Below are positions 3,799-64,000 of a DNA stretch of 64,000 nucleotides, piece by piece. A program made the position numbers and the translations under genes. The stretch spans positions 151,251 through 215,250 of the IMG/VR virus record IMGVR_UViG_3300031963_000006; one strand, given 5' to 3'. Under the pieces are notes generated by a model, which was not told the origin of the DNA, ran no database searches, and saw only the letters and a program-made list of their open reading frames with translations. Position 1 is the stretch's first letter. Each line of letters opens with the position of its first letter.

Positions 3799-4014
3799 TT
3801 ATAACGTTAAATTTGTTGTAACTTCACAACCTATTGAGTCTACAATTTTTAGAGTAAATTCAGAAAAGTTTAACATTATTGTGGGAATCTCAAATGTATA
3901 TGGTGCCGAGTCAGTTCTGTCTATATAAATGCATTGTGTTTGAGGGTTGTCACATATATAAATGTCATATGGTGTTGTTCCTGAAAGGTCGTTAATTGTA
4001 ACTACAGTTGGCAT
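3799..4014 (-). CDS. Small protein homologous to the N-terminus of the 1..1248 gene
   Basis: TINDLSGTTPYDIYICD vs [18 protein letters not shown]; TATTTAT upstream. Confidence 0.8.
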   Translation of the reverse strand: MPTVVTINDLSGTTPYDIYICDNPQTQCIYIDRTDSAPYTFEIPTIMLNFSEFTLKIVDSIGCEVTTNLTL

Positions 4015-4063
4015 TAGTAAATTTTATTTCAATAAATATAATACTGACCCAAAACTTGTGAAG

Positions 4064-4092
4064 TTGACATGAACTAATTTGTACCTTATTTT
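4064..4092 (+). promoter_or_regulatory. TTGACA-N17-TATTTT promoter, 6 nt before the primase ATG
   Basis: Read directly from the sequence. Confidence 0.6.
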
Positions 4093-4098
4093 TACCTG

Positions 4099-5001
4099 AT
4101 GTCCGATGAAAAAGAAATATTGGTTGAGTTACTACGTGAAATTCTTGGTGATGAAAAGATGCACTACGAACACAGAGGACAAATCTCATTCAACTGTCCC
4201 CTCTGCGACGAGGACCGAAACAAGGGTAATTTAGAGGTCAACTACCTACAACACGTATACAAATGTTGGAGTTGTTCGGAAACAAACGGTATGCACGGAC
4301 CTCTTGGTAAACTAATTGATAACTACGGAAACAAAAAACATAAAAAGGTTTATAAACTTTTTCAACCTGAGGACATAAAACCAAAGGAAAAACCAAAACA
4401 AAAGTTAAGGCTACCTGAAAGTTTTGTTTTATTCAAAGATTCAAACCCAATCTATCCGGTATATAAACAAGCATACAACTACCTGAAAAACAGAGGGATA
4501 ACCGATGAGATTATCGAAAGGTATTCAATAGGATTTTGTGACAACGGAAGTCACGCTGGTAGAATTATTGTACCATCATATAATATTGAGGGGGAATTGA
4601 ATTATTATATTGCAAGGAGTTGGGACCCCAAGTCACGAGCCAAATATAAAAACCCTCAAGCCGAAAAGGATAAGATAATCTTTAACCAACACTTAATTGA
4701 CTGGAAAAAGGATGTGTATCTTGTTGAGGGGGTATTTGACGGATTCTTTTTATCAAATAGTATTCCGATGCTTGGTAAACATATGTCAGAGTTGTTGTTT
4801 AATACCCTATACGATAAGGTTAAAAAGAATATCATTATTGCCCTCGATGGTGATGCTTGGGACAACGCTGTTAAATTATATCGTGAGTTAAATGGGGGTA
4901 AATTATACGGAAAAATAAAAATTATTCATCTACCCAAAGATAAGGACGTATGTGATTTGAGGGGTCAGATAGATGAATACTATGTACAAATAAAGGATTA
5001 A
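4099..5001 (+). CDS. DNA primase (zinc finger + Toprim)
   Basis: CPLC...YKCWSC zinc finger; GRIIVP; VEGVFD and LDGD Toprim motifs. Confidence 0.85.
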   Translation: MSDEKEILVELLREILGDEKMHYEHRGQISFNCPLCDEDRNKGNLEVNYLQHVYKCWSCSETNGMHGPLGKLIDNYGNKKHKKVYKLFQPEDIKPKEKPKQKLRLPESFVLFKDSNPIYPVYKQAYNYLKNRGITDEIIERYSIGFCDNGSHAGRIIVPSYNIEGELNYYIARSWDPKSRAKYKNPQAEKDKIIFNQHLIDWKKDVYLVEGVFDGFFLSNSIPMLGKHMSELLFNTLYDKVKKNIIIALDGDAWDNAVKLYRELNGGKLYGKIKIIHLPKDKDVCDLRGQIDEYYVQIKD

Positions 5002-5002
5002 T

Positions 5003-6458: not shown

Positions 6459-6683
6459 ATGGAAGACTTATTACCAAAAATTGATTTAAAAGAACAACCT
6501 AGTGAGGTTTGTGAAAGCTGTGGAAGTGAATATTTTAAGGAAGTCGTTTTAATTAAAAGGGTGTCTAAACTCTACACAGGTAGTTCTGAAGACACCCTTG
6601 TTCCTTTTCCTACATACATGTGTGAAAAGTGTGGACACGTTAACAAAGATTTTGCTTTATTTGATAAAGGAACTCAACTATGA
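6459..6683 (+). CDS. Small zinc-ribbon protein
   Basis: CESC and CEKC pairs. Confidence 0.75.
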   Translation: MEDLLPKIDLKEQPSEVCESCGSEYFKEVVLIKRVSKLYTGSSEDTLVPFPTYMCEKCGHVNKDFALFDKGTQL

Positions 6684-7459
6684 TAAAAAAACTAGTACAC
6701 TTTAGTGACCTACATGTTAGGTTGTTTAAGGACCATAACCTATACCGAAGTATATTGGAAGAAGCTTTTAGTCAATGGAGAAAAATTAATCCTGACCGAA
6801 TAGTTTTTACAGGTGATTTAGTTCATAGTAAAAACCAAATGACTCCTGAACTTGTTGAGTTCATAGCGTGGACATTAAACGAGTGTTCTAAAATTGCAAA
6901 GACTATTTTGATACCCGGAAACCACGACTTCTTGGAAAATAATATGGAAAGACTAGACGCTCTTACTCCTGTAGTAGACTCACTTCAAAATGAAATGGTG
7001 GTTTATTATAAAAACAGAGGAGTTTATCAAGATGCAAATATTGACTGGTGTGTTTATTCACTTATGGACCACAATATCCCACCCGATATTACAAAAAATA
7101 ATAGAAAGAAAATCGGATTGTTTCATGGACCAGTTCAAGGGTTGACAACTGATGTTGGATACAAGTTTGATAGTGGATTTGAGTCAGATAAGTTTGATGG
7201 GTGTGACCTTGTTTTGTGTGGTGATATTCATAAAAGACAAGTTTTTAACATACCTGGAGGCAAGAAGGCTTATATGATTGGCTCAACAATTCAACAAAAC
7301 TTTGGTGAAACAATTGAAAAACATGGATATGGTATATATGATGTGGAAAATGACAAATATGAGTTTGTTAATTTGGTAAACCCAAAACCTTTCCTATCAT
7401 TCAAATTAAATTCTTATGACCAAATAATTGATGGAACAGAAAAACTCCTTAACTATTGA
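6680..7459 (+). CDS. SbcD/Mre11-like metallophosphoesterase nuclease
   Basis: SDLH, GDLVH, GNHD, HG, GDIH motifs; near an SbcC-like gene. Confidence 0.85.
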   Translation: MIKKLVHFSDLHVRLFKDHNLYRSILEEAFSQWRKINPDRIVFTGDLVHSKNQMTPELVEFIAWTLNECSKIAKTILIPGNHDFLENNMERLDALTPVVDSLQNEMVVYYKNRGVYQDANIDWCVYSLMDHNIPPDITKNNRKKIGLFHGPVQGLTTDVGYKFDSGFESDKFDGCDLVLCGDIHKRQVFNIPGGKKAYMIGSTIQQNFGETIEKHGYGIYDVENDKYEFVNLVNPKPFLSFKLNSYDQIIDGTEKLLNY

Positions 7460-7925
7460 TTTAAGTATTCAAGACTATAAAGACTTAATGACTTTTTGTA
7501 ACCTTAATGAAATTAAGTTAGTTGACGATTTTGTAAGACTTTGTTTTAGAAAAGGGTATTACATAGAGAAATATGGTTTATTAAACCAAGGTCAATTACC
7601 TGAAGTTATTGACCGTGAATTAGAGAAAGAAGTTATTAAAGAAGTTATAGTTGAGAAAGAAATTTTCATCGAAAAACCTGTAGTTGATAATACAAAGATT
7701 GAAGAGTTACAAAACGAGATTTATATTTTAAAAGGTAAACTTGAAAATCAAAAAGAAGTTGAATGTGGTAAATTACAGGAAACTCTGATGAACTTAAACA
7801 GACAACTAGGTGAAAAGAATGAGGTTATAAAAGAATTAAGAAATAAGGTTGATGACCTTGAAAATCTCACAAAAACTTCTTATGCTTTCTACATGAAAAG
7901 TTCAAATTTAAAAGATAGATTATAA
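7431..7925 (+). CDS. Coiled-coil hypothetical protein
   Basis: In-operon ORF; EKEVIKEVIVEK tract. Confidence 0.7.
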   Translation: MEQKNSLTIDLSIQDYKDLMTFCNLNEIKLVDDFVRLCFRKGYYIEKYGLLNQGQLPEVIDRELEKEVIKEVIVEKEIFIEKPVVDNTKIEELQNEIYILKGKLENQKEVECGKLQETLMNLNRQLGEKNEVIKELRNKVDDLENLTKTSYAFYMKSSNLKDRL

Positions 7926-7935
7926 AACAAATAAA

Positions 7936-8488: not shown

Positions 8489-10861
8489 ATGGATTTGTTT
8501 AATCCACCGCCCAATTTTAATTATAAAAATATGACTCACGATTTAGAAGTAGAAAATTTAGAAAACCCTTATATACAAGTCGTTTGGGAGGATTATGCGG
8601 AGAACTTCACTCAGGAAAAGATTAAAAGTGTTAGACAGTATTTCCAAAAAAAATACTTCTCAACTAATGTGAATGTTATAACCAAAACAATCATAACTGA
8701 AGAGACGACACATACTGTTGACATATCTTTTAATATTCTTGATAAGAACTATCAACATGAACTAATAAAGTCATATTTGAAATCCAAATCAAATGAGGAA
8801 TTATTTGAAGAAGTTTATAAATTGGATTCAGTGGTGGATAACAAATTGGTGTTAGACCAGTCAGAAGCGTCCCCATTCAAAAGATGGTACATTAAAAACA
8901 TTGAGTTCTCAAATTTTCTATCTTATGGTGAAAACCAAAAGTTGGATTTTGAAAAGTGTAATGGTATTAGTGTAGTTGAGTCTAATCCGCCAAATTTTGG
9001 TGGTAAGACGGTTCTGACGGTTGATTTACTTTTATTTCTTTTCTTTAATGAAACAACCAAAACAACAAAGGCTGAGGAAATCTTTAATAGATTTACCGAT
9101 AAGAATAAAGTATCGGTTAAAGGTGAAATTGTTATTGATGGAGATGAATACATTATTGTTCGTAACATTGAAAGAAAGAAAGCGAAATCGGGGGAATGGA
9201 ATGTTAAGACTGAATTAGATTTTTTTAAAAAGTTATCCGATGGTAGTTTACAGAACTTCACTGGTGAACAACGTAGAGAGACTGAGTCCTTTATCAAAAC
9301 TTCTATAGGTTCTAAGGATGACTTTTTGATGACAATACTAACAACGGCAACAAACCTTGAGGAATTGATTGACTCTAAACCAACAGCAAGGGGTCAAGTA
9401 TTGTCTCGTTTTATGGGATTAGACTTTCTAAAGAGAAAGGAAGAAGCGGGTAAGGAGATTTATTCTGAGTTTTCTAAGTCAATGATATCAAATGTTTACA
9501 ATAGTGAACAACTTAAGAATGACATCGAGACTTATGAGGAGACTATTAAAACCAATGAGAAACTTATCACAACTGAACAAGGTAACTTGATTGATGTTCA
9601 AGGACGTATTATAAAAGGACAAGAGTATCGTGATGGATTGTTGAAGAACAAACACATGGATATTGATAAGGAGATTGGTTTATTACAACCTGATAAAGTT
9701 AAAGTTGAAATTTCAGGTTTTGAAACTCAAAAATCCCAAGTTGAGAAACAATTATCCGAAGTTAAAGTTGTTGAACCTAGCGAATACTATCATGAAGACA
9801 AACATGATGAGGTCAAGGACGAATACAACACAGCGTTTAAGAAAAAGGTTGAAGTTGAAACCAATATTTCATCAATCGAAAAGTTAAAAAGTTCTGTTAG
9901 TGGTGGTATTAAATGTGAACACTGTGGTATTGAATTAATGAACGCGGCCATAACACAGTCAAGAATCTCAGAACTTGACGGATATCTCACGAATAAAAAG
10001 GAAATTGAGGACTTAATGAATGATTTATCAAACAAAGAGAAGGGATTTGTTAACCTAAAGAAAGAGTTTGATGAGTATGAAAAAAATAAGTTAATCAAAG
10101 AGAAGTTGGAACTTAACATAGAAAGTTTCAATATGAAAATTGAAAAACTTAATGAAAAGCTTACAAAATACGAACAGGCTCAAGAAAAAATACAAGCAAA
10201 CAATAAGATTGACGAATTGTTAATAAAGGCCGACATTAGACTTGGTGAGTTGGAGAGAGAAAAGGACGATATCAACAAAAAGATAACAGGTTATCAATTT
10301 GAAATTGACAGTCTTAATGAAAAAATTGACAAAAACAAAAAGTTAATTGAAAAAATTAAGGAAGAATCGTCAAAGGAACGGGTTTATAAGGTATATTTGG
10401 AAACATTTGGAAAAAATGGTATTTCCAAACTAATTATGAAAACAATGATGCCTTTAATTAATTCAGAATTACAAAGGTTGCTTGAAGATAGTTGTCATTT
10501 TAGATTGGAAATTAGAATCAATGACAAAAACGAGGTTGAGTTTTTGATGATTGATAACAATACTCAAATTGAAAAGTTAATGTCATCGGGTTCGGGATAT
10601 GAAAGAACTATCGCTTCCTTAGCTTTGAGAGCGGTATTGAGTAAAATATGTTCTTTACCAAAACCAAACATCATAGTTTTTGATGAAGTATTCGGAAAGA
10701 TTTCAAATGAAAACTTAGATATGGTTTCAGAGTTCTTTAAGAAAATTAAAGAATATTTTGAAAAAATATTTGTAATAACACACAACCCTTTGGTTACAAA
10801 TTGGTCAGATAATGTTGTTAGAATAGAAAAAGTTGATAACATTAGTTTTGTGAATCAATAA
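8489..10861 (+). CDS. SbcC/Rad50-like ATPase (recombination nuclease subunit)
   Basis: Walker A NFGGKT, coiled coils, CEHC zinc hook, SGSGYE signature, IVFDE Walker B, ITH. Confidence 0.9.
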   Translation: MDLFNPPPNFNYKNMTHDLEVENLENPYIQVVWEDYAENFTQEKIKSVRQYFQKKYFSTNVNVITKTIITEETTHTVDISFNILDKNYQHELIKSYLKSKSNEELFEEVYKLDSVVDNKLVLDQSEASPFKRWYIKNIEFSNFLSYGENQKLDFEKCNGISVVESNPPNFGGKTVLTVDLLLFLFFNETTKTTKAEEIFNRFTDKNKVSVKGEIVIDGDEYIIVRNIERKKAKSGEWNVKTELDFFKKLSDGSLQNFTGEQRRETESFIKTSIGSKDDFLMTILTTATNLEELIDSKPTARGQVLSRFMGLDFLKRKEEAGKEIYSEFSKSMISNVYNSEQLKNDIETYEETIKTNEKLITTEQGNLIDVQGRIIKGQEYRDGLLKNKHMDIDKEIGLLQPDKVKVEISGFETQKSQVEKQLSEVKVVEPSEYYHEDKHDEVKDEYNTAFKKKVEVETNISSIEKLKSSVSGGIKCEHCGIELMNAAITQSRISELDGYLTNKKEIEDLMNDLSNKEKGFVNLKKEFDEYEKNKLIKEKLELNIESFNMKIEKLNEKLTKYEQAQEKIQANNKIDELLIKADIRLGELEREKDDINKKITGYQFEIDSLNEKIDKNKKLIEKIKEESSKERVYKVYLETFGKNGISKLIMKTMMPLINSELQRLLEDSCHFRLEIRINDKNEVEFLMIDNNTQIEKLMSSGSGYERTIASLALRAVLSKICSLPKPNIIVFDEVFGKISNENLDMVSEFFKKIKEYFEKIFVITHNPLVTNWSDNVVRIEKVDNISFVNQ

Positions 10862-10887
10862 TTTTGGTTATTTTTGTAAAAAATTAT

Positions 10888-11442
10888 ATGAAGTACATTA
10901 TTTTTATATTCGGAGAGACAGATAATCAAGACAAATTTGTTAATTTGTTATGTGACAATATTATTTTGAACATCAATGTTGATTATATAAAGTTTTTTTA
11001 TGGAGATACCTCTTGTGTGTTTACATTTAAAAGTGAAACACAGTTCGAAGAGGTATCTAAAAAAGTTACTAAAATATTAGAAAAGATTGATATTTCTTAT
11101 TTCTTGTTACCTTATAGTGATTTTGAAATTAACGCGAGAATTGATGATGCGACTCTTGAACATTTGTTTGGTAAAGAGTTAGACGAAGAAACACCCGATT
11201 CGGATGAGATGGATTTGGTTGAACCACAAACTTTTTTCTCAAGACTTGATGAGGCACTGGCAAATATGAAAGATAATATAGAAGATTATGATGATGAGAT
11301 TGATATTGACATATTACCAAGATTGAAGAAGAAGAAACCAATAAAAACTCTTGATGAAATTTTGGACCAGATTAACGAAAATGGATTAAATTCGCTCACA
11401 GAAGAAGACAAACAACTTTTAGAAAAATACTCAAACATATAA
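10888..11442 (+). CDS. Hypothetical protein with a C-terminal DUF6576-like helical motif
   Basis: TLDEILDQINENGLNSLTEEDKQLL; TATTTTTG upstream. Confidence 0.65.
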   Translation: MKYIIFIFGETDNQDKFVNLLCDNIILNINVDYIKFFYGDTSCVFTFKSETQFEEVSKKVTKILEKIDISYFLLPYSDFEINARIDDATLEHLFGKELDEETPDSDEMDLVEPQTFFSRLDEALANMKDNIEDYDDEIDIDILPRLKKKKPIKTLDEILDQINENGLNSLTEEDKQLLEKYSNI

Positions 11443-11443
11443 T

Positions 11444-12244
11444 ATGAAAGAAAAAAACACCGGTATTCCAATTAATCAAGAAGAAATTCAACATTACCTA
11501 AAAGATATTCGTAAAATTAAGGTTATGACCCCCGAGAGGGAACGTGAGTTGGCTAAGATGATTCAATCTGAAAATCTAACCAAACAACAACGAGATGAAA
11601 TCAACCAAGAAATTTTGGAAGGTAATCTCAGGTTTGTTATCACGGTGGCAAAACAATATCAAAATCAAGGTTTGGATTTTCCTGACTTGATTGCCGAGGG
11701 TAACTTAGGACTATTGAAAGCCATTCAAAACTTTGATTGGAGTAAAAACTTGAGGTTTATATCATATGCGGTTTGGTGGGTTAAACAATCTATCTTACAG
11801 TCCCTCAACGACAACGCTCGTACTATTCGACTTCCAGTAAATGTGGTTCAGGACCTACAACGAGCAAAGAAAGAGGTGGAATCTAAGGGTGGTAAATTGG
11901 ATGAGAGATTTGAAATGTTACCGTCTATTATTGATTTGGATATGAACATCAATGAAGAAGGTGATACTTTGGTTGATGTTATTAAGAACGAAGACGCGGA
12001 TATGCCTGATGCGGTGTTTAATAACAAAGACGTTCTTAAGATGGAACTAGTTGGATTGTTAAACGTTTTGGATGAGAGAGAACGAATAATCATATTGGAT
12101 TATTTCGGACTATCAGGTACACCAAGAACACTCGAAGACATAGGGTCTGACTTTAATTTGACGAAAGAGAGAGTACGACAAATTAAAGAAAAGGCTCTAA
12201 GAAAACTGAGGAACGAAAGTTCGGTTTTGTTCGACTACATGTAA
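11444..12244 (+). CDS. RNA polymerase sigma-70 factor, Bacteroidota sigma-A-like
   Basis: NLRFVITVAKQYQNQG, DLIAEGNLGL, FISYAVWW, TLEDIG..TKERVRQIKEKALRKLR; no region 1.1. Confidence 0.95.
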   Translation: MKEKNTGIPINQEEIQHYLKDIRKIKVMTPERERELAKMIQSENLTKQQRDEINQEILEGNLRFVITVAKQYQNQGLDFPDLIAEGNLGLLKAIQNFDWSKNLRFISYAVWWVKQSILQSLNDNARTIRLPVNVVQDLQRAKKEVESKGGKLDERFEMLPSIIDLDMNINEEGDTLVDVIKNEDADMPDAVFNNKDVLKMELVGLLNVLDERERIIILDYFGLSGTPRTLEDIGSDFNLTKERVRQIKEKALRKLRNESSVLFDYM

Positions 12245-12251: not shown

Positions 12252-12289
12252 AAAACCTTCTATTTATTATGATAGAAGGTTTTTTATTT
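12252..12289 (+). terminator. Intrinsic terminator after the sigma gene, with TATTTAT inside the hairpin
   Basis: 12-bp stem aaaaccttctat/atagaaggtttt followed by a T-run. Confidence 0.7.
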
Positions 12290-16394: not shown

Positions 16395-16429
16395 CGTAAA
16401 AATTAGATATTTATAAATAAAAAAATCGC

Positions 16430-20957: not shown

Positions 20958-21117
20958 TTATATTCTCGATAATTTTAACGGTCCCATAAACTGCGGATAT
21001 TAAAAAATAAACTGTAAAAACAATCAAAGAAGTTGGAAGAGTCTCCAACTTTTTTTGTGCGCTACACTTACTACATGATTTTTTTTCAGGGGTGACATCT
21101 ATTATATTGTTTGACAT
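20944..21117 (-). CDS. 57-aa membrane protein with CxxC (not in the ORF track)
   Basis: MSNNIIDVTPEKKSCSKCSAQ...TM segment. Confidence 0.5.
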   Translation of the reverse strand: MSNNIIDVTPEKKSCSKCSAQKKLETLPTSLIVFTVYFLISAVYGTVKIIENIINLF

Positions 21118-21172
21118 ATTATTAATTTTAAATAAAATATAAGGGTTATTTTCAAATCTATAAATATTTTAT

Positions 21173-22050: not shown

Positions 22051-22083
22051 TTTATTTGATATTTATTAAGTAAAAACATTCAA

Positions 22084-23778: not shown

Positions 23779-23834
23779 TTTGGTGGGATAGAGTTTCCGC
23801 CATATATTTGTACCACAATTAAAAACAATAACCC

Positions 23835-31075: not shown

Positions 31076-31116
31076 ATCTTTTTTTTATCACTAATATCAA
31101 CTATATTTGTGATAAC

Positions 31117-33447: not shown

Positions 33448-33489
33448 CCTCCATTTTTGTTTTTGTGAATATTTATATAAAAAAAATCT

Positions 33490-35413: not shown

Positions 35414-35620
35414 AATGATAAATACTTTATGATATGAAAATGATTTATTTTATAAAATAATTAAGTTTTTTTGTTTAAAATTTAACTTTTTAATAATTTA
35501 TACATATTTATACGAAAAATAAGCCCAACACCCCTTTCTAAATAGTTGGTTAAAACTAAACCCTAAAATTCCCCCAAAGATTTTTAGGGTTTTTGTTTTT
35601 TTCGTATATTTGTACCCATT

Positions 35621-36052
35621 ATGAAAAATAAACTATCCATAGTTAATAAGAAAGCTCGTTATGAATATGAGTTTATTTCTACGTTCACTGCAGGTATCCA
35701 ATTGATTGGAAGTGAGGTAAAGACAATAAAAAAGGGTAAACTTTCAATAAATGACGCCTTCTGTATTTTTAAAGAAAATGAACTTTTTATTAAAAATATG
35801 GTTTTGACTGAGAAAGTTAATGAGTTTTCACCTGATGTTAAACGAGATAAAAAATTGTTGTTAAAAAAGTCCGAACTAAATGGATTGAAAAGAGATATGA
35901 TTAAAGGACTAACAATAATTGTTAATAAAGTGTTTGAAAATGATAAAGGGTTGATAAAAGTTGAAATTTCTCTTGCAAAAGGTAAAAAACTGTACGATAA
36001 ACGTAATACAATTAAGGAAAGAGAACTAAATAGGGACAAAAAATTTGTATGA
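35621..36052 (+). CDS. smpB: SsrA-binding protein SmpB
   Basis: NKKARYEY, AGIQLIGSEVK, KKLLL, AKGKKLYDKR. Confidence 0.93.
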   Translation: MKNKLSIVNKKARYEYEFISTFTAGIQLIGSEVKTIKKGKLSINDAFCIFKENELFIKNMVLTEKVNEFSPDVKRDKKLLLKKSELNGLKRDMIKGLTIIVNKVFENDKGLIKVEISLAKGKKLYDKRNTIKERELNRDKKFV

Positions 36053-36089
36053 TTGTAAATTATTCGTATATTTGTAAAAATTATAACTC

Positions 36090-36793: not shown

Positions 36794-36822
36794 GTTTTTT
36801 GATATTTATAATAAAAGACCAT

Positions 36823-37598: not shown

Positions 37599-37626
37599 AT
37601 AAAAAATTTATATTTATAAATAAAAA

Positions 37627-38076: not shown

Positions 38077-38145
38077 CTTAAATTGTCTTATCTTTGAACC
38101 CTCACCAATGGTGGGGGTTTTTAAATTTAAAGATATTTATACAAT

Positions 38146-39410: not shown

Positions 39411-39423
39411 ACCAATAAATATT

Positions 39424-40966: not shown

Positions 40967-41021
40967 AACTTATTTTTTTTGTTTTATTTAATCATAAATA
41001 TTTATTATCATATAAAATGTT

Positions 41022-42268: not shown

Positions 42269-42297
42269 ATTATACACAACAATATCAATATTGTCAA
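42269..42297 (-). promoter_or_regulatory. Perfect TTGACA-N17-TATAAT promoter, 6 nt before the DoxX ATG
   Basis: Read directly on the reverse strand. Confidence 0.75.
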
Positions 42298-44492: not shown

Positions 44493-44526
44493 TACTAATA
44501 AATATAAAAAGTTATATATTTGTCTA

Positions 44527-45338: not shown

Positions 45339-45372
45339 TGTATTGAATAAATATACAATAAACTAAAAGGGG

Positions 45373-47089: not shown

Positions 47090-47137
47090 AATCTATAAAT
47101 ATAAATATTATGAGATATTTATAATAAACTTAAAGTC

Positions 47138-49787: not shown

Positions 49788-49799
49788 AACGTATAAATA

Positions 49800-50117
49800 T
49801 TAACCAGCACCGTAATCTGAGTAGGGGTATTTAATTTCAATACCAATTTTACCCTCAACCCATTTTGCAATTATCATTAAAGAACGAGTCAAGTTCAAAG
49901 AAAAGAATTCTGCAACTTCGGTTAGAATATCTGAACTTATATAACAATCATCACTCATGTAATAATATGCAATTTTTGCATATTGATTGTCTTTATAACT
50001 ACGTTCAGATTCAAAGAAATAATGACCTCCACCATCTTCACGATGATAAAAGTCCTGAGTATTAAGATACTTAAATACTATACTATCAATTTGAGATTCG
50101 GTTATTAGATATTTCAT
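49800..50117 (-). CDS. MKYLITESQ-family core paralog
   Basis: MKYLITESQIDSIVFKYLNTQDF...FFSL...IIAKWVE. Confidence 0.85.
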   Translation of the reverse strand: MKYLITESQIDSIVFKYLNTQDFYHREDGGGHYFFESERSYKDNQYAKIAYYYMSDDCYISSDILTEVAEFFSLNLTRSLMIIAKWVEGKIGIEIKYPYSDYGAG

Positions 50118-51830: not shown

Positions 51831-51842
51831 ATGGTATAAATA

Positions 51843-52178
51843 TTAATTATAATAGGGTATTCTCAACGCAAACCACTTCGTGTTGTTGCGCCATTCGGTG
51901 TTTGTGACCTTCATTTGTAGTCTATTTTCAACCCATCTACCAATAACTGGTTCAGAATCATAATGTGACATAGAAAAGAAGGTGGAAATTTCTTCAATTA
52001 ATTTATAATGTACATAACACCAATTATCATTTTTATCATATTTAATTTGAGCGTATACATCATTCACTGAGTTCACGAAGTATATTTTTTCATCAAAGTT
52101 AATCTGAATAAAATCTTGGTTATCCAAATACTTAAAGATTACTTTATCAATTTGTGATTCGGTGATTAGGTATTTCAT
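51843..52178 (-). CDS. MKYLITESQ-family core paralog
   Basis: MKYLITESQIDKVIFKYLDNQDF. Confidence 0.85.
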   Translation of the reverse strand: MKYLITESQIDKVIFKYLDNQDFIQINFDEKIYFVNSVNDVYAQIKYDKNDNWCYVHYKLIEEISTFFSMSHYDSEPVIGRWVENRLQMKVTNTEWRNNTKWFALRIPYYN

Positions 52179-52826: not shown

Positions 52827-52910
52827 ATGATATAAATATAATGACGCAACAAAATAACCACCTTTACTTAACGGGGGGAATTTACTATAATTAAAATAAA
52901 AAATATAGAT

Positions 52911-53614: not shown

Positions 53615-53686
53615 ATACCCGATTAGTTTGATATTTAATATAATATACGTATATTTGTATATATTTATAATGTAAAGGGTATAATT

Positions 53687-55940: not shown

Positions 55941-56400
55941 GACACAAATATACGGCGACTTCCCCATTGTACAAATCTACTTATCAACAATATTATTTGT
56001 TAAATCTCTTGGAGGATATTAATCTGTGCCGTACCTTTGGTTGATGCCTTTCTGTGTGGGGGAAACAATAAAGCATCATGCTAAGTTACGACCCCCAAGG
56101 TTAACTACCAAACAATTTAACACTTATAGTTATTAACAATCCTTGTATATATCCCCATTCTGACATGACATCATTAGAGACCATTTAACAACAGGGGGGA
56201 CCCACTATGTCAGACTGTCATAATAGGTGGGGGTATGGGGTATATAGGGGGGTGGGTCCCTATAGTGGGGGTATCCCCCCTCCCCCTCCCCGTCATATTG
56301 TCAGTAAAAAGGGGGGACAATCCCTTTTGCAAAATATGGAAATAAAATTCTGGAAAAATTTTCTGGAAAATTTTGGTATTTATATGTAAAATAATACACT

Positions 56401-57022: not shown

Positions 57023-57196
57023 TTGTTTTTTGTAAACTAATTAAACCCCATTCCAAAAAGAGTGGGGTTTTTTATTTCCCCATATATTGACCCCCTATTC
57101 TAAAATGTCCCCCAATGTAGAAAAAAAATTTCTGGAAAAATTTTGACAATTTGGGTATTATCTTATATCATTAGGTAAATTAAAAAAATACATATT

Positions 57197-57841: not shown

Positions 57842-57958
57842 ATTTAATAAGACATTAACCCCCTTTCTTTTGATTGGGGGTTTTTTATTTTCTAAAAATT
57901 TTTTCGACGGTTCCCGATTCCCCCTACCCCCTTTTTTATTTCTGATATATTTATTGAT

Positions 57959-59803: not shown

Positions 59804-59873
59804 TTTATAACATATTTCCCTTCGGGTTGTCAATCCCCCAACCCCCTTTTTTATTCCTAGTATATTTATTGAT

Positions 59874-60218
59874 ATGAATAATATTGAACAATATAGAAAA
59901 AGGTTCTTTATGTTAATGGAGTCATCAATGGGTGATGTTAAACCATTAATCTTGGAAACCAGTTTAGATTTGAATACTGCAACCATATATTGGATGAGTT
60001 GTGGAGGTGATGAAGTTGAATTAACTCCCGATTCTAAGAAACTGTTATTACCTGGTAAGGTAATAAATAATACACAATATTATTATTTTGATTCTGAACC
60101 TAATGACGCCATTGGTGAATATAAAATTATGGAATGTCTTGGACCTGAGATTGGCAAACAAGATGATTTGTATATTGATGGGGATTCGGGTAAATTATTC
60201 TTAACTAAGAATTATTAA
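59874..60218 (+). CDS. Hypothetical protein (LME...PLILE leader)
   Basis: TATTTAT 4 nt upstream. Confidence 0.75.
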   Translation: MNNIEQYRKRFFMLMESSMGDVKPLILETSLDLNTATIYWMSCGGDEVELTPDSKKLLLPGKVINNTQYYYFDSEPNDAIGEYKIMECLGPEIGKQDDLYIDGDSGKLFLTKNY

Positions 60219-60223
60219 GAGGT

Positions 60224-60499
60224 ATGGACTACATTGTAAATTACTCACAACTTGCGGCATGCATTCGTAGAAGGTTTTCTATTGAAGACATAAATCAGAT
60301 TATACGTTCAGTTAAGGAACAGATTGAAGATGGTGAGAGTGTGGACACGGCGGTGTATGATACAATCAGACATTATATCGCATTAAAACGACCTACCCGT
60401 ATTAATGACGAGGGAACCGAACAACAATATTGGGATTCTTATATCAAATATGAAATCCCCCTTGTTGAATTTGTTAAACATGTTTTGGAATTAAAATAA
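60224..60499 (+). CDS. Hypothetical protein
   Basis: MDYIVNYSQL, leader-like. Confidence 0.7.
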   Translation: MDYIVNYSQLAACIRRRFSIEDINQIIRSVKEQIEDGESVDTAVYDTIRHYIALKRPTRINDEGTEQQYWDSYIKYEIPLVEFVKHVLELK

Positions 60500-60638
60500 T
60501 TCCTAAAATTTTTCCCTTCGGGTTATCAATCCCCCTACCCCCTTTTTTTAAAAGGGTTCCCCATTGTTGAAAAAAAATTTCTGGAAAAAATTTTGGGGAA
60601 TTGGGACTTTGTGGTATCTTTGTCAAAAATTAATCACA

Positions 60639-61562
60639 ATGAGTAAAGTTACAATGGAAATCGGACAACGTTTAATTATTGAGAAGTATGTGCAAGATGC
60701 TTATGACAGATTGAAAAATGTTCCAAACCCCAAAATGACAGATAGTCTTCATAAATTCATATGTGATTGTGTGGGACATCTTCCGGCAACCTATGGTCCT
60801 AAGATTCAGAATAAAATTATTCGTGAACTTAAAGCCATTGTTGTATCAAGTGATAAGGAACGAGGTGACTTTAGAAAGAATGTCACATTCTTTGAGGTTA
60901 AATGTTCATTCCTTTCAAAGGGGGTTAGCTATTCAATTACCAATATTCGAAATTGGCATAACTTTGACTATTATGTTCTTTGTTTTATTGATGTTACCAA
61001 TAACTTTACTCCAAACTTCTATGTTATCAAAAAGGATGATATCAATAACTTCAAACTAAGGGGGATGAACGGTACTGCCGAATCTAATACCGTTAATCAG
61101 AATGTTGGTATGCGTACCGCCATTCAAGTTGATTCCCCTGATATGGAACTTTTGAAAAGTTTGAATCTTTTGAAGGACAATAGTTTTGAATCTTTATATG
61201 AGTTTGTTGATTCATTCAAGATGAAAAAGACAAAACCTAATGGATTTAAATTTAAATTCAATGGACAGAATTTTGATAGTGATAATGTTACCGAGAACTA
61301 CATTAATTTCTTGAAATATTTTTTGTATATTAATCAGGGTTCCAATTCTTTGGGTATTCAAAACATTCAACGTTCTTTGGGTAAGTTCTTTTCTTTCAAT
61401 GTTAAAAATCTTTCAAGTTGTACAAGAAAGAAAAAACAATATGTTAAGATTATGGATACGTTCTATGTTTCAACATACACATCAACCCAAAAGAAAATTG
61501 GTCATATTCAGAAAATATGTGACTCTTATCCATATGAACTTAACTTTGAATTCTATGGTTAA
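60639..61562 (+). CDS. Possible PD-(D/E)XK endonuclease-like protein
   Basis: RGD...FEVKCS...FDYY; TATCTTTG upstream. Confidence 0.55.
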   Translation: MSKVTMEIGQRLIIEKYVQDAYDRLKNVPNPKMTDSLHKFICDCVGHLPATYGPKIQNKIIRELKAIVVSSDKERGDFRKNVTFFEVKCSFLSKGVSYSITNIRNWHNFDYYVLCFIDVTNNFTPNFYVIKKDDINNFKLRGMNGTAESNTVNQNVGMRTAIQVDSPDMELLKSLNLLKDNSFESLYEFVDSFKMKKTKPNGFKFKFNGQNFDSDNVTENYINFLKYFLYINQGSNSLGIQNIQRSLGKFFSFNVKNLSSCTRKKKQYVKIMDTFYVSTYTSTQKKIGHIQKICDSYPYELNFEFYG

Positions 61563-61673
61563 TTTGCTATCCCCCATTTCTTATTGTAGAGTGGGGGATT
61601 TTTTTCTATAAATTTTTTTCGACGGTTTCCGATTCCCCCTACCCCCTTTTTTATTTATAGTATATTTATTTAT

Positions 61674-62735
61674 ATGTCTAAAAGATTTGTAATTAGTGAA
61701 AACGAAATCCGAGAAATCAGGTCAATGTACGGATTATTAAATGAACAAGAAAGAGTTATAAATGCGTCTACATCTCCTGAAAAAATGTCCAACTTTCCTG
61801 GAAATCAAAAATTTGGTTTGAGAGGGGATAAAACTAAAGAAAATTTTTATTTCAAGTCAACATTAAAAAATTTAATATTTGCCAGTACTGGTGATGCAAC
61901 AAATTATCTCTCAAGTTTCACTCCTACAAATGATGCTAAACAATATGTTGACTACATAAAAATTGGGGATAATGAATTAACAAATCAAGGAAGTATTAGT
62001 TTTGATTTGAGAACTTTACCTTCCTCAACTGAAGTTATTGCGACTCACAATGGTTTATTGTTATTGAGAAGAATGATGAATGAATTGGGAGGACAAAAAA
62101 ATGGAAAAGTAACTTTGAGTATGAGTTCGGAGGTTAGAGAGTCGGGGCAAAAAAACTATACAATATCAGGTTTATCTTCCTCAATAATTGCCGGATTCAA
62201 TGGGTTATCATCTGTTTTGGGAGTTTTGATTGTTCCCCAACAAGAAAGAGAGAAAATAAGTGATGGATACGCTGTCCAATATTTTAAAGATAAAAGTGAC
62301 GATGAACTTAAAAGTATGGCCCTAAAATTTATGAAAAACATAACATCTTACTATTTTTTGGCAAAACAAGATGTTCCCCAAATAGATACAATAATTACTG
62401 ATAAACAATTTACAACTGCTGCTGACACAAGTGCATTTGAAACTTATTATGGTAATGGACTAACCAGAGATAATTTATCTGTTTTAAATTCATCTTGGAA
62501 AAAATTACAAGACGAGTTAAAAAGTATTATGATATCCAACATGAAATTGTATTACCCTGAGGATTTCCAAGGGTTAGCCGAGAAAGCGGCTGAGATGGTT
62601 AAATCAGCATATTCTACAGATAAGTTTAATGAAAATTACAGTAGATTATTCAAACAAAGTGAACTTGGTAGATTATCTCCAATCCAACAAGGTACAAAAA
62701 CCCAATCTTCCACTTCTTATCAATTAGGAAAGTAA
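61674..62735 (+). CDS. Protein with a VISE...LLNEQ leader
   Basis: TATTTAT 4 nt upstream. Confidence 0.8.
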   Translation: MSKRFVISENEIREIRSMYGLLNEQERVINASTSPEKMSNFPGNQKFGLRGDKTKENFYFKSTLKNLIFASTGDATNYLSSFTPTNDAKQYVDYIKIGDNELTNQGSISFDLRTLPSSTEVIATHNGLLLLRRMMNELGGQKNGKVTLSMSSEVRESGQKNYTISGLSSSIIAGFNGLSSVLGVLIVPQQEREKISDGYAVQYFKDKSDDELKSMALKFMKNITSYYFLAKQDVPQIDTIITDKQFTTAADTSAFETYYGNGLTRDNLSVLNSSWKKLQDELKSIMISNMKLYYPEDFQGLAEKAAEMVKSAYSTDKFNENYSRLFKQSELGRLSPIQQGTKTQSSTSYQLGK

Positions 62736-62737
62736 TT

Positions 62738-63022
62738 TTATTTATAAACTTTTACCGTCTTAACGTTAAACCAAGTCGAAGTTTCAGGTGCGACATAACT
62801 TTTTCCATCAATAATAATGAATTCGTTTTCATAGATTACGGTGGTGTCGCCCTGAGAAAAAACAAGTTCTTTATAAACCGTGAGAGCTGGCTCCTCAACA
62901 TATGAAGTATCAGTATAAACTGTAATTACCCTGTCACTATCGGAATCCTTGACTGACAATTGGGTTGTCTTACAAGAAAACAAGTATAGAGAAATAAAAG
63001 AGAATACGATTATTTTTTTCAT
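62738..63022 (-). CDS. Lipoprotein
   Basis: Lipobox LFSC; TATTTTTG upstream. Confidence 0.75.
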   Translation of the reverse strand: MKKIIVFSFISLYLFSCKTTQLSVKDSDSDRVITVYTDTSYVEEPALTVYKELVFSQGDTTVIYENEFIIIDGKSYVAPETSTWFNVKTVKVYK

Positions 63023-63176
63023 GTGGTTTATTATTTAACTACAAAAATACAACAAAACTAACCTAAAACAAAATTTTTTATTCTGTGTTACCAATCTCCT
63101 ACCCCCTTTTTTATTTAAATCTATATTGACATAGTAATTCATTTTGTTTATCATTATGAAAAATTAATTAAACAAT

Positions 63177-64000
63177 ATGAAAAAAACATTATTTTCTTTT
63201 ATCCTAACCGTATTGAGTATTTGTTCATTCGCTCAAAACACGGTTGTTGACATTATCGTTAACAGTGCTGAACATGACACATTGGAAGCTGCCGTTATTG
63301 CTGCAGAACTTGCCGATGATTTATCGGGACCTGGTCCATTTACAGTTTTTGCCCCAACTGATGAGGCTTTTGCGGCTCTTCCTTCAGGTACAATCGAAAC
63401 TCTACTAGCTGACCCAACTGGAACACTTGCTCAGATTCTTTTGTATCACGTTGTTGGTGGTCAAGCTCTTTCAACAGATTTGAGTGATGGTCAAATTATT
63501 GCAACACTACAAGGACAAACTGTAGAGGTTACTATTAATGCCGAGGGAGTATTCATCAACGATGCTCAAGTTATAGTTGCTGACATCACGGCTACCAACG
63601 GAGTAGTTCACGTAATTGACGCTATCCTTCTACCACCGGCTCCACAACCAACAACTACTGTTGTAGATGTAATTGTTAATAGTGATGTTCACAATACACT
63701 TGAAGCGGCTGTTGTTGCAGCAGGTTTGGTTGAAACACTTAGTGGTACTGGACCGTTCACCGTATTTGCTCCTACTGATAACGCGTTTGCCGCACTTCCT
63801 GCCGGTACAGTTGAGGCTCTTTTGGCGAACATCGGAGAACTACAAAACATATTACTTTACCACGTTGCGTCAGGTTCAGTTTTGTCAACTGATTTGACAA
63901 ATGGTCAAGAAATTCCAACTTTAACGTTCTTCCCTCCACTTGTTGTAACAATTGATAACAATGGTGTTATGATTAATAACGCAATGGTTACAGTTGCTGA
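63177..64000 (+). CDS. Secreted tandem fasciclin (FAS1) domain protein, runs off the window
   Basis: Not in the ORF track. Signal peptide; twice GPFTVFAPTD.AF and ILLYHV; NGVVHVID; TTGACA-N17-TATCAT at 63126-63154. Confidence 0.92.
   Translation, partial: MKKTLFSFILTVLSICSFAQNTVVDIIVNSAEHDTLEAAVIAAELADDLSGPGPFTVFAPTDEAFAALPSGTIETLLADPTGTLAQILLYHVVGGQALSTDLSDGQIIATLQGQTVEVTINAEGVFINDAQVIVADITATNGVVHVIDAILLPPAPQPTTTVVDVIVNSDVHNTLEAAVVAAGLVETLSGTGPFTVFAPTDNAFAALPAGTVEALLANIGELQNILLYHVASGSVLSTDLTNGQEIPTLTFFPPLVVTIDNNGVMINNAMVTVA

What the first reader, a model, noticed from the sequence alone, without database searches (positions are those of the whole stretch)
4014..63177. Three distinct promoter classes in one phage segment
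Seen: (A) Bacteroidota-type TAnnTTTG, often with an upstream TTTG, before 10888, 23835, 31117, 35621, 36090, 44527, 53687, 55940(-), 60639 and 63022(-). (B) Enteric-like TTGACA-N17-TAnnnT before primase (4064), the Dam-like MTase (21173), DoxX (42297, perfect), nitroreductase (52863), a lipoprotein (57143) and fasciclin (63126). (C) (A)TATTTAT before more than 25 genes. Class C looks like class A with the final G changed to A. Known: Bacteroidota sigma-A reads TTTG/TAnnTTTG, not TTGACA/TATAAT. Inference: an early/middle/late cascade with B and/or C read by phage-encoded sigma factors.
Basis: partly seen in the sequence, partly recalled or inferred. Interest (0 to 1): 0.65.

Follow-up and report, generated by a model that had tools for sequence, protein, structure and literature searches.

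The report
Two phage promoter classes, not three
A 321-kb freshwater jumbo phage of Bacteroidota starts a few dozen genes from host-type promoters and about a hundred others, including its virion genes, from its own strict TATTTAT promoter placed so close to the start codon that many messages would have no leader. The proposed third, E. coli-like promoter class does not hold up.

Summary
The window lies in a complete 321,403-bp IMG/VR phage genome with T4-type capsid, portal and terminase genes. No RNA polymerase gene was detected.

- **Class A (TAnnTTTG) is real.** All 10 sites are present. A TTTG box sits 19-20 nt upstream in 13 of 51 intergenic sites. The motif is kept in 52 of 52 relatives ahead of the operon that carries the phage sigma gene.
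- **Class C (TATTTAT) is real and is the main signal.** It is the most enriched 7-mer upstream of genes (109 observed, 5 expected). It precedes 27 window genes and 103 of 346 genome genes. It is invariant in all orthologous upstream regions of relatives.
- **Class C behaves as a promoter with no -35 box.** An A-run, or the A of the ATG, lies 4-5 nt downstream of the motif. That predicts leaderless or very short-leader mRNAs.
- **Class B (TTGACA-N17-TAnnnT) is not a separate class.** Two of the six sites are misdescribed. The window count equals chance (6 against 5.65). The sites are not conserved, and two are variants of class A promoters.
- **The phage carries two sigma-like genes.** One is a sigma-A-like gene in the window (11444-12244) under a class A promoter. 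The other is a diverged gp55-like candidate elsewhere in the genome.

A host-sigma to phage-sigma switch is likely. Which sigma reads TATTTAT is unresolved, and no transcription start site (TSS) data exist.

The parts
10843..10876 (+). Class A promoter cluster (TAGTTTTG, TAATTTTG, TATTTTTG) ahead of the DUF6576 + sigma operon
   Evidence: TAnnTTTG is kept in 52 of 52 unique orthologous upstream regions of relatives.
10888..11442 (+). DUF6576 gene, first gene of the sigma operon
   Evidence: Pfam PF20216, 36.8 bits. It lies next to the sigma gene in all relatives listed.
11444..12244 (+). Phage sigma factor, 266 aa, sigma-A-like (regions 1.2, 2 and 4; region 3.1 shortened)
   Evidence: PF04542 59.8 bits, PF04545 56.6 bits, PF00140 31.5 bits. 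It is 40-45% identical to Bacteroidota/FCB RpoD; alignment. It is the only strong sigma hit in the genome.
12252..12289 (+). Terminator-like hairpin after the sigma gene, with TATTTAT (12261-12267) in its loop
   Evidence: Hairpin and loop motif are kept in 29 of 29 unique relatives.
23779..23810 (+). Class A two-box promoter TTTG-N20-TATATTTG ahead of the DUF932 gene (23835)
31102..31109 (+). Class A TATATTTG, 7 nt before the ATG at 31117
35605..35612 (+). Class A TATATTTG, 8 nt before the ATG at 35621
36044..36074 (+). Class A two-box TTTG-N19-TATATTTG ahead of 36090
44515..44522 (+). Class A TATATTTG, exactly 4 nt before the ATG at 44527 (leaderless geometry)
53627..53657 (+). Class A two-box TTTG-N19-TATATTTG ahead of the HTH gene at 53687
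55945..55975 (-). Class A two-box TTTG-N19-TATATTTG, 4 nt before the ATG at 55940
60592..60622 (+). Class A two-box TTTG-N19-TATCTTTG ahead of 60639
63042..63072 (-). Class A two-box TTTG-N19-TATTTTTG ahead of 63022
4032..4039 (-). Class C ATATTTAT ahead of gene 3799-4014(-)
   Evidence: Kept in 30 of 30 unique relatives while the flanks diverge.
16407..16414 (+). Class C ATATTTAT followed by an A-run, 15 nt before the ATG at 16430
   Evidence: Kept in all unique relatives (29 of 29; 28 listed).
22059..22066 (+). Class C ahead of the 463-aa gene at 22084
   Evidence: Kept in 5 of 5 relatives.
33469..33476 (+). Class C after a terminator hairpin, ahead of 33490
36802..36809 (+). Class C after a terminator hairpin, ahead of 36823
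37610..37617 (+). Class C ahead of 37627
38133..38140 (+). Class C, 5 nt before the ATG at 38146 (leaderless geometry), after a terminator hairpin
39415..39422 (-). Class C, 4 nt before the ATG of 38718-39410(-)
40994..41005 (.). Back-to-back class C motifs for the divergent genes 40358-40966(-) and 41022-41429(+)
44498..44505 (-). Class C, 5 nt before the ATG of 43815-44492(-)
45347..45354 (-). Class C ahead of 44886-45338(-), after a terminator hairpin
47095..47122 (.). Class C motifs for the divergent genes 46577-47089(-) and 47138-47413(+)
49793..49800 (-). Class C, 5 nt before the ATG of 49482-49787(-)
51836..51843 (-). Class C, 5 nt before the ATG of 51525-51830(-)
52832..52839 (-). Class C, 5 nt before the ATG of 52497-52826(-)
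57947..57954 (+). Class C, 4 nt before the ATG at 57959, after the repeated CCCCCTACCCCC cassette
59862..59869 (+). Class C, 4 nt before the ATG at 59874, after the repeated cassette
61662..61669 (+). Class C ahead of 61674, after the repeated cassette
4064..4092 (+). 'Class B' at primase: TTGACA-N17-TATTTT(TA), ending about 4-6 nt from the ATG. Read here as a variant of a host-type promoter.
   Evidence: In relatives the slot holds TTGAC/TTTGAT plus TATCTTTG/TATATTTG (9 relatives), TTATTTTTA or other forms. The class B pattern is kept in 7 of 31.
21111..21138 (+).
   Evidence: Kept in 2 of 25 relatives; others carry TAAATTTG or TATTTAT there.
42269..42297 (-). Perfect TTGACA-N17-TATAAT ahead of the DoxX_2 gene (ATG at 42256)
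   Evidence: Conservation not tested.
52863..52891 (+). TTTACT-N17-TATAAT ahead of the nitroreductase gene (10 of 12 matches, not TTGACA)
57143..57171 (+). TTGACA-N17-TATCAT ahead of 57197; paralogue of the class A promoter at 60592-60622
63126..63154 (+). TTGACA-N17-TATCAT ahead of the fasciclin/T9SS-tail gene (63177)

Best explanation
The window carries two real kinds of transcription start signal.

1. **Class A is the ordinary Bacteroidota sigma-A promoter.** It has TTTG at about -33 and TAnnTTTG at -12 to -5, and is read by the unmodified host holoenzyme early in infection. It drives about 40-50 mostly small genes clustered at 160-290 kb of the genome. These include the operon DUF6576 + phage sigma (window 10888-12244).
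2. **Class C is a phage-specific single-element promoter, [A/G]TATTTAT, with no -33/-35 box.** Transcription would start at an A 4-5 nt downstream of the motif.
   - In about a third of cases that A is the A of the ATG, giving a leaderless mRNA.
   - In most others an AAA run starts a leader of roughly 7-15 nt.
   - Class C heads about 100 transcription units: the replication region, the endolysin-containing block and the T4-type virion genes. It often sits directly behind a terminator hairpin.
3. **Class C is most likely read by host core RNA polymerase carrying a phage-encoded sigma.** My first choice is the sigma-A-like protein of the window. It is made from a class A promoter. It keeps the host-type -12/-11 reading helix but differs in region 1.2 and the start of region 2.3, the parts that read the downstream half of the -10 element.
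4. **The TTGACA-type 'class B' sites are not a class of their own.** They are sporadic variants of host-type promoters or chance matches.

Shown: motif enrichment, strand bias, spacing, conservation and gene content. Inferred: that these are TSSs, their timing, and which sigma reads class C.
For: **Enrichment and strand bias of classes A and C:**

**Class C is not a per-gene translation signal:**
- It is present before 2% of genes that abut the upstream gene.
- It is present before 53-62% of genes with a 20-99 nt spacer.

**Fixed geometry:**
- The distance from TATTTAT to the ATG is bimodal: 4-5 nt (33 sites) and 13-17 nt (43 sites). TATATTTG peaks at exactly 4 nt.
- In the leadered group, positions 5-7 after the motif are A in 45-47 of 54 sites. 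That is the same place as the A of the ATG in the other group.
- TAnnTTTG lies at -12 to -5 of mapped TSSs in Flavobacterium psychrophilum (PMC9723704), so 4 nt of spacing puts +1 on the A of the ATG.

**The -33 box** peaks at N19-20 for class A and is absent for class C.

**Phylogenetic footprint in 82 relatives' loci:**
- TATTTAT is kept in 30 of 30, 29 of 29, 29 of 29 and 5 of 5 unique orthologous upstream regions, in diverged flanks.
- TAnnTTTG is kept in 52 of 52 before the sigma operon.

**Gene content:**
- Class C precedes terminase (16 nt), portal (29 nt), sheath (35 nt) and tail fibre (33 nt), and nearly every spacer in the structural and replication regions.
- Class A genes have a median length of 132 aa.

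**RNA polymerase and sigma:**
- No RNA polymerase was found.
- One strong sigma is present. It is related to Bacteroidota RpoD. Regions 2.4 and 4.2 are conserved, and 1.2, early 2.3 and 3.1 are altered.
- The gp55-like candidate sits without a promoter of its own in an operon headed by class C motifs. It abuts the upstream gene in all 46 unique relatives. Something made earlier must therefore open class C.

**Class B:**
Against: - No TSS or expression timing has been measured. The only RNA data were short metatranscriptome contigs that show nothing about 5' ends.
- The sigma-A-like protein keeps a host-identical region 4.2 recognition helix. That suggests its promoters have a -33 box, and class C has none.
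- The phage has T4-type virion genes. In T4-like phages a -10-only late promoter is read by gp55. A gp55-like candidate exists here.
- Gene calls are my own simple caller, so some start codons and spacings may be off.
- A small intergenic excess of near-consensus TTGACA/TATAAT sites remains unexplained (7 against 1.1).
Confidence: 0.6

Rival explanations
1. This is a T4-style arrangement. The diverged gp55-like sigma (genome 12159-12908, minus strand, outside the window) reads TATTTAT as a late promoter, perhaps helped by a sliding clamp. The sigma-A-like protein of the window then stands in for host sigma-A on promoters that have a -33/-35 box (class A, or the TTGACA sites), for instance after the host sigma is inactivated.
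For: **T4-type core genes:**
- Gp23 capsid 249.6 bits, gp20 portal 258 bits, Terminase_6N.
- gp46/gp47-like genes lie beside the sigma gene.

**Class C has the form of a T4 late promoter:** one strict 7-8 bp element, no -35, and a position before virion genes (PMC2988020).

**The 249-aa protein is a plausible gp55 relative:**
- It is the best hit of T4 gp55 among 346 proteins (E 0.01).
- It hits PHROG 234 'late sigma transcription factor' (E 0.009).
- It hits Sigma70_r2 weakly (12 bits).
- Its model aligns to sigma region 2 domains in the top 40 rows (Z 5.5-8.4, rmsd 2.6-3.2 Å over 78-96 residues).

**The sigma-A-like protein** keeps host-like 2.4 and 4.2 helices.
Against: - Every sigma signal for the 249-aa protein is weak: hhalign probability 5%, no PDB sequence hit, model pLDDT 67, and Z under 8.5 for a helical domain.
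- Its gene has no promoter of its own and lies in an operon headed only by class C motifs. It would need another route for its first expression. An internal two-box site about 400 nt upstream is present in only about a third of relatives.
- The motif is not TATAAATA.
Confidence: 0.28
2. One reading: three separate classes form an early/middle/late cascade, with the TTGACA-N17-TAnnnT class read by a phage sigma.
For: - Intergenic, sense-oriented excess of the two-box pattern: 8 against 1.1, and 7 against 1.1 for matches of at least 11 of 12.
- A perfect 12 of 12 site before DoxX.
- The phage sigma has an intact region 4.2 that could read TTGACA, and an altered region 1.2 that might drop the need for the G of TTTG.
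Against: - The window count is at chance. General sigma-70-like sites are at chance.
- Two of the six sites are misdescribed.
- The sites are not kept in relatives: 7 of 31 and 2 of 25. The primase slot is class A in 9 relatives.
- 57143 is paralogous to a class A promoter.
- There are at most about 10 sites genome-wide, which is very few for a core, clade-wide sigma.
Confidence: 0.08
3. TATTTAT acts on the RNA rather than as a promoter: as a translation enhancer or a processing site.
For: - It lies very close to start codons.
- Bacteroidota lack Shine-Dalgarno sequences and use A/U-rich leaders (PMC6847099, listed).
Against: - It is absent before 98% of genes that abut the upstream gene.
- Two sharp spacings share a fixed A at +5 to +7.
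- With 4-5 nt of spacing there is no room for a ribosome-binding leader.
- It commonly follows terminator hairpins.
Confidence: 0.04

Closest known systems
Bacteroidota sigma-A promoters (-33 TTTG / -7 TAnnTTTG), as mapped in Flavobacterium psychrophilum and Bacteroides (PMC9723704, PMC7366714)
   Same: Class A has the same two boxes and the same spacing (TTTG 19-20 nt upstream). The spacing to the ATG fits TAnnTTTG lying at -12 to -5.
   Different: - It sits on a phage genome.
- About a third of strong sites lie exactly 4 nt from the ATG (leaderless geometry). Leaderless mRNAs are only 5.5% of mRNAs in F. psychrophilum.
- A subset shares a long extended consensus.
Phage T4 late promoters read by gp55, with gp33 and the gp45 clamp (PMC2988020)
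   Same: - One strict AT-rich element of about 8 bp near -10 and no -35 box.
- About 100 copies, placed before virion genes.
- The phage has T4-type capsid, portal and terminase genes and a possible gp55 relative.
   Different: - The sequence is [A/G]TATTTAT, not TATAAATA.
- It also heads replication genes and many small non-structural genes.
- Many sites are leaderless.
- A full-length sigma-A-like sigma is present as well, which T4 lacks.
- Dependence on a clamp or a gp33-like protein is unknown.
Bacillus phage SPO1 sigma cascade (host sigma-A, then gp28, then gp33/34)
   Same: Host sigma promoters drive a phage sigma gene, whose product then redirects host core polymerase to phage-specific promoters. 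There are two phage sigma-like proteins.
   Different: - Only two promoter motifs are visible here.
- The phage sigma is a close structural copy of the host primary sigma rather than a small divergent one.
'Moraphages', freshwater Bacteroidota jumbo phages (PMC12619734)
   Same: Freshwater habitat, predicted Bacteroidota host, genome of about 300 kb, a DnaJ gene, a core sigma factor, and no RNA polymerase genes.
   Different: - Membership was not tested by phylogeny.
- That paper reports genomes up to 307 kb and gives no promoter analysis.

Membership tests
Bacteroidota sigma-A promoter | TAnnTTTG box enriched upstream of genes in sense orientation | tested here: met
   60 against 26 (z 6.7). 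TATATTTG 28 against 2.7 (z 16). Antisense and coding densities are 2-15 times lower.
Bacteroidota sigma-A promoter | TTTG (-33) box about 19-21 nt upstream of the TA | tested here: met
   13 of 51 intergenic class A sites have TTTG at N19-20, with none at N21-28. Class C has 2 of 119.
Bacteroidota sigma-A promoter | TSS about 5 nt downstream of the G (box at -12 to -5) | not testable with these tools
   Only geometry is available: a peak of ATG exactly 4 nt after the G fits PMC9723704. No 5'-end data exist.
T4-type late promoter (gp55-dependent) | Single strict -10-region element without a -35 box | tested here: met
   All 7 positions are near invariant. There is no upstream box.
T4-type late promoter (gp55-dependent) | Consensus TATAAATA | tested here: not met
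   The consensus is [A/G]TATTTAT in sense orientation. The reverse orientation shows no positional peak.
T4-type late promoter (gp55-dependent) | Phage encodes a gp55 homologue | tested here: inconclusive
   Genome 12159-12908(-): phmmer E 0.01, PHROG 234 E 0.009, fold Z up to 8.4 to sigma region 2. Against this, hhalign probability is 5%.
T4-type late promoter (gp55-dependent) | Precedes virion (late) genes | tested here: met
   Terminase, portal, sheath and tail fibre. It also precedes non-late genes.
Sigma-70 consensus promoter class (TTGACA-N17-TATAAT) | More sites than the AT-rich background gives | tested here: not met
   Window 6 against 5.65; 110 against 110 and 110 against 103. Only a small intergenic excess remains.
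Sigma-70 consensus promoter class (TTGACA-N17-TATAAT) | Kept at orthologous positions in relatives | tested here: not met
   7 of 31 at primase and 2 of 25 at Dam. The other four sites were not tested.
Sigma-70 family, primary-like (group 1/2) sigma | Regions 1.2, 2 and 4 present | tested here: met
   PF00140, PF04542 and PF04545 all score over their cut-offs. PDB SigA E 4e-47.
Sigma-70 family, primary-like (group 1/2) sigma | Complete region 3 | tested here: not met
   About 24 residues of region 3.1 are missing relative to Bacteroidota RpoD, and there is no Pfam region 3 hit.
Leaderless mRNA | Primary 5' end at the A of the AUG | not testable with these tools
   Only promoter-to-ATG spacing supports it.
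Moraphage lineage | Clusters with moraphages in TerL/MCP trees | not tested
   Only shared traits were compared.

The most novel reading that the evidence does not exclude
A widespread clade of freshwater Bacteroidota jumbo phages has copied the host's primary sigma factor and reshaped its region 1.2, early 2.3 and 3.1. As a result, host core polymerase switches from TTTG/TAnnTTTG promoters to a box-less [A/G]TATTTAT promoter. That promoter heads about 100 units and makes leaderless mRNAs for about a third of them, in a phylum where leaderless mRNAs are rare. A second, gp55-like sigma made from these promoters would add a further tier that has no motif of its own.
Probability: 0.35. Interest if true: 0.7.

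Novelty: new variant of a known kind. Interest (0 to 1): 0.55.

Why it matters
- **Little is known about transcription in Bacteroidota phages.** The promoters of this abundant group of freshwater jumbo phages have not been described in the literature I could search.
- **The motif is a practical annotation tool.** A strict, conserved TATTTAT promoter marks transcription units and true start codons in hundreds of related metagenomic genomes.
- **The pair of promoters is a natural specificity experiment.** A host-type promoter and a near-relative phage promoter, together with a phage copy of the host primary sigma, could show which sigma residues read the TTTG part of the Bacteroidota -7 box.
- **The predicted leaderless messages bear on translation.** Their abundance would be unusual for the phylum and relevant to how Bacteroidota ribosomes, which do not use Shine-Dalgarno pairing, start translation.
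- **The negative result also matters.** Enteric-type TTGACA/TATAAT matches in AT-rich phage DNA are mostly background.

Tried and rejected
- **RNA evidence.** Four metatranscriptome runs held only 150-270-nt contigs at low depth on window 41400-47400 (6,001 bases, one over the 6,000-letter limit the operators set for read laying; it ran). They give no information on starts, strand or level.
- **Similar records.** Megablast of 22 kb against the phage collection found no match. tblastn of both sigma proteins against cultured phages found no close relative that could separate their roles.
- **Family scans of large proteins.** PHROG scans of 20 large proteins were mostly blank.
- **Phage RNA polymerase.**
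  - Pfam Rpb1 and Rpb2 searches found nothing, with positive controls.
  - The T7-type model found nothing, but its control was silent, so it is uninformative.
  - There is no DxDGD motif in any large protein.
  - Very diverged polymerases cannot be excluded.
- **Second sigma.** PDB sequence and profile searches were blank. hhalign to T4 gp55 gave a probability of only 5%.
- **An early promoter for the gp55-like gene.** A TTTG-N19-TACTTTTG inside the upstream gene is not kept in the nearest relatives; a similar site occurs in about a third of the others. I judged it unreliable.
- **A third motif.** I looked in spacers lacking class A and class C and in the structural region, and found none.
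- **The T-rich signal about 13 nt upstream of class C** is explained by terminator T-runs, not by a -35 box.
- **Crude control in cellular genomes.** In 296 kb of Bacteroidota/FCB DNA around rpoD, TATTTAT precedes 8 of 298 ORFs and TAnnTTTG 40 of 298.
- **Genetic code.** No other genetic code was used.

Full report
**What the window is**

The window is bases 151383-215382 of a single 321,403-bp IMG/VR virus record with direct terminal repeats. CheckV rates it complete. GC content is 32.7%.
- It has T4-type virion genes: Gp23-like capsid 249.6 bits, gp20-like portal 258 bits, Terminase_6N.
- It also has a tail sheath and a family B DNA polymerase.
- It carries DnaJ, a Dam-like MTase and an N6/N4 MTase.
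- No RNA polymerase was found by Pfam (one search is uninformative) or by a catalytic-motif scan.
- Near-identical and 78-90% related contigs of 305-328 kb are common in lake and river metagenomes.
- A Bacteroidota host is indicated by two results. The closest cellular relatives of the phage sigma are Bacteroidota/FCB RpoD at 40-45% identity. The fasciclin gene has a type IX secretion sorting tail.
- The traits match the recently described 'moraphages' (PMC12619734). That paper contains no promoter analysis, and I did not test membership.

**Method**

I called genes with my own periodic Markov caller, giving 346 genes and 91% coding. I counted motifs in four compartments:
- intergenic DNA oriented towards a gene start (28.9 kb);
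- the same DNA in antisense;
- coding DNA;
- dinucleotide-preserving shuffles.

**Class A**

- TAnnTTTG occurs 60 times in sense intergenic DNA against 26 in shuffles. TATATTTG occurs 28 times against 2.7.
- A TTTG box lies 19-20 nt upstream in 13 of 51 intergenic sites, with none at 21-28 nt. This is the two-box form of the Bacteroidota primary sigma.
- Class A precedes 42 genes with a median length of 132 aa, almost all between 160 and 290 kb of the genome.

**Class C**

TATTTAT is the strongest signal in the genome.
- It is the most enriched 7-mer in the 60 nt before genes: 109 observed, 5.0 expected, P 4e-103.
- ATATTTAT occurs 75 times in sense intergenic DNA against 8.2 in shuffles. There is 1 antisense copy and 22 copies in 292 kb of coding sense.
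- In the window ATATTTAT occurs 36 times against 14.5 +/- 4, and 27 genes have the motif close upstream.
- Single-base variants are not enriched. The exceptions are A/G/C (not T) at the preceding position, and A to G at the sixth base, which gives the class A core ATATTTGT.
- There is no -33/-35 element. The faint T-run about 13 nt upstream comes from terminator hairpins that often sit just before the motif.

**Class C is a start signal for transcription, not translation**

- The motif is present before 2% of the 133 genes that abut their upstream neighbour. It is present before 53-62% of genes with a 20-99 nt spacer.
- Its distance to the ATG is bimodal: 4-5 nt at 33 sites and 13-17 nt at 43 sites.
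- In the longer group, positions 5-7 after the motif are A in 45-47 of 54 sites. That is exactly where the A of the ATG lies in the short group.
- TATATTTG shows the same pattern, with a peak at exactly 4 nt.
- In Flavobacterium psychrophilum the TAnnTTTG box occupies -12 to -5 of mapped starts, and leaderless mRNAs are only 5.5% of mRNAs (PMC9723704).
- With that geometry, 4 nt of spacing puts +1 on the A of the ATG. About a third of the predicted promoters of this phage would therefore make leaderless mRNAs, and most others would give leaders of roughly 7-15 nt beginning with AAA.
- This is inference from spacing. No 5' ends were available.

**Conservation in relatives**

I compared 82 loci from relatives with 78-100% sigma identity.
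- TATTTAT is present in every unique orthologous upstream region of genes 3799-4014(-) (30 of 30), 12310 (29 of 29), 16430 (29 of 29) and 22084 (5 of 5). The neighbouring bases differ.
- TAnnTTTG is present in 52 of 52 upstream regions of the DUF6576 + sigma operon.
- The TATTTAT at 12261-12267 lies in the loop of the terminator hairpin that follows the sigma gene. Hairpin and loop are kept in all relatives.

**Class B**

- Two of the six sites are not as described. 21173 is TTGCCT, with a TTGACA at 21111. 52863 is TTTACT.
- The pattern occurs 6 times in the window against 5.65 +/- 2.54 by chance. General sigma-70-like sites are at the shuffled level.
- A small excess appears only when counting sense intergenic DNA: 8 against 1.1, and 7 against 1.1 for matches of at least 11 of 12.
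- In relatives the pattern is kept in 7 of 31 primase upstream regions and 2 of 25 Dam upstream regions.
- The primase slot carries TTTGAT-N19-TATCTTTG or TATATTTG, 4-5 nt from the ATG, in nine relatives. The window's TTGACA-N17-TATTTTTA is therefore a local variant of a host-type leaderless promoter.
- The 57143 site is a paralogue of the class A promoter at 60592-60622. Both follow the repeat TTCTGGAAAAATT, and they differ as TTGACA against TTGGGG and TATCATTA against TATCTTTG.
- Bacteroidota RpoD and the phage sigma share the region 4.2 helix ERVRQIKEKA with other primary sigmas, so a TTGACA box is simply a good -33 box.
- I conclude that class B is not a separate class. The sites before DoxX, nitroreductase and fasciclin remain untested for conservation.

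**Sigma factors**

The window gene 11444-12244 encodes a 266-aa sigma with regions 1.2, 2 and 4. It is the only strong sigma hit in the genome. Aligned with twelve Bacteroidota/FCB RpoD proteins:
- it keeps the region 2.4 helix (YAVWWVKQSILQ against YAVWWIRQSILQ) and the region 4.2 helix;
- it differs in region 1.2 (IQHYLKDIR against LDKYLQEIG) and at the start of region 2.3 (NFDWSKNLRF against RFDETRGFKF);
- it has a 6-residue insert after region 1.2 and lacks about 24 residues of region 3.1.

From general knowledge of sigma-DNA structures, region 2.4 and late 2.3 read -12/-11. Region 1.2 with early 2.3 reads the downstream part, -7 to -4. Classes A and C share the TA and differ downstream of it. 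The pattern of change therefore fits a sigma that has moved from TAnnTTTG to TATTTAT, but this is inference.

A second candidate lies at genome 12159-12908 (minus strand, 249 aa).
- It is the best phmmer hit of T4 gp55 (E 0.01).
- It hits the PHROG 'late sigma transcription factor' (E 0.009) and Sigma70_r2 weakly.
- Its AlphaFold model (pLDDT 67) aligns to sigma region 2 domains in the top 40 rows of the second-look search (Z 5.5-8.4).
- Each signal is weak, and hhalign gives only 5%.
- The gene abuts its upstream neighbour in all 46 unique relatives and sits in a long operon headed only by class C motifs.

**Most likely mechanism**

1. Host sigma-A holoenzyme reads class A early and makes the 266-aa sigma.
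2. A phage sigma then directs core polymerase to class C. Class C heads nearly every transcription unit of the replication and virion regions, the endolysin-containing block after the sigma gene and many small genes.

The T4-style alternative is that the gp55-like protein reads class C and the sigma-A-like protein serves promoters with a -33 box. It is supported by the T4-type core genes, the box-less form of class C and the conserved 4.2 helix of the 266-aa sigma.

No third motif was found in spacers lacking class A and class C or in the structural region. The sequence therefore shows two tiers, not three.

**Novelty**

Sigma cascades in phages are classical (T4, SPO1; PMC2988020). I found no description of any of the following in the searchable literature:
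- the TATTTAT promoter;
- its leaderless arrangement;
- a phage copy of the short Bacteroidota primary sigma with a cut-down region 3.1.

I rate this a new variant of a known kind, of moderate interest, resting on strong sequence statistics and conservation but without any transcript data.

Noticed in passing
window 57920-61690: A roughly 50-nt intergenic cassette (...CCCTTCGGGTT(G/A)TCAATCCCCCTACCCCCTTTTTT...) occurs in five direct copies, at 57920, 58519, 59836, 60531 and 61635. Each copy is followed by a promoter (C, A-like, C, A, C). It is found nowhere else in the genome.
   Followed up: partly
window 56348, 56361, 57130, 60579: The repeat TTCTGGAAAA(A)TT lies immediately upstream of a class C promoter, the 'class B' promoter at 57143 and the class A promoter at 60615. 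It may be a regulator site or UP-like element. An HTH protein is encoded nearby at 53687-54235.
   Followed up: partly
window 12252-12289: The terminator-like hairpin directly after the sigma gene carries TATTTAT in its 14-nt loop. Stem and loop are kept in 29 of 29 relatives. It could be a combined stop for early transcripts and start for later ones.
   Followed up: partly
window 4048-4069: The block AAAACTTGTGAAG(g/a/t)TTGA lies between the divergent genes 3799-4014(-) and primase. It is kept in most relatives while the rest of the spacer varies. It may be a shared regulatory site.
   Followed up: no
window 63177-64000 (gene runs to 64319 in the genome): A fasciclin-domain protein carries a type IX secretion C-terminal sorting domain (PF18962, 46.7 bits). 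This phage auxiliary gene marks a Bacteroidota host.
   Followed up: partly
window 38718-39410 (-): This 230-aa protein (DUF6878 at its C-terminus) is the best, though weak (E 0.05), phmmer hit of the T4 gp45 sliding clamp and has the same length. If it is a clamp, it would matter for T4-style late transcription.
   Followed up: no
window 6680-10861: A Metallophos (gp47/SbcD-like) gene and an SbcC/gp46-like gene lie just upstream of the sigma operon. This recalls the 46-47...55 neighbourhood of T4.
   Followed up: partly
window 23779-23835; genome 3485, 225320, 275028: A subset of class A promoters shares a long extended consensus, TTTGGTGGGA-N3-AGTTT-N5-TATATTTGTAnCACAATTAAAAC. This suggests a duplicated strong early promoter with a common leader.
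   Followed up: no
window 49482-52826 (-): A run of small genes of about 100-110 aa on the minus strand. Several carry the same TATTTATa(t/c)cat-ATG leaderless arrangement, so they are probably a paralogous family.
   Followed up: no
window 18241-18423: The orthologues of this 60-aa gene in relatives are flagged as Hc1 histone-like protein (PF07432).
   Followed up: no
genome 1-400 and 321000-321403 (outside the window): The genome ends carry a 132-nt tandem repeat rich in ACA/CCT codons. This is besides the direct terminal repeat reported by IMG/VR.
   Followed up: no
genome about 277200-278170 (outside the window): A 1-kb stretch without called genes ends in a sequence that looks like the 3' part of a tRNA (GGTTCAACTCCCAC...). 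The window itself has no tRNA.
   Followed up: no
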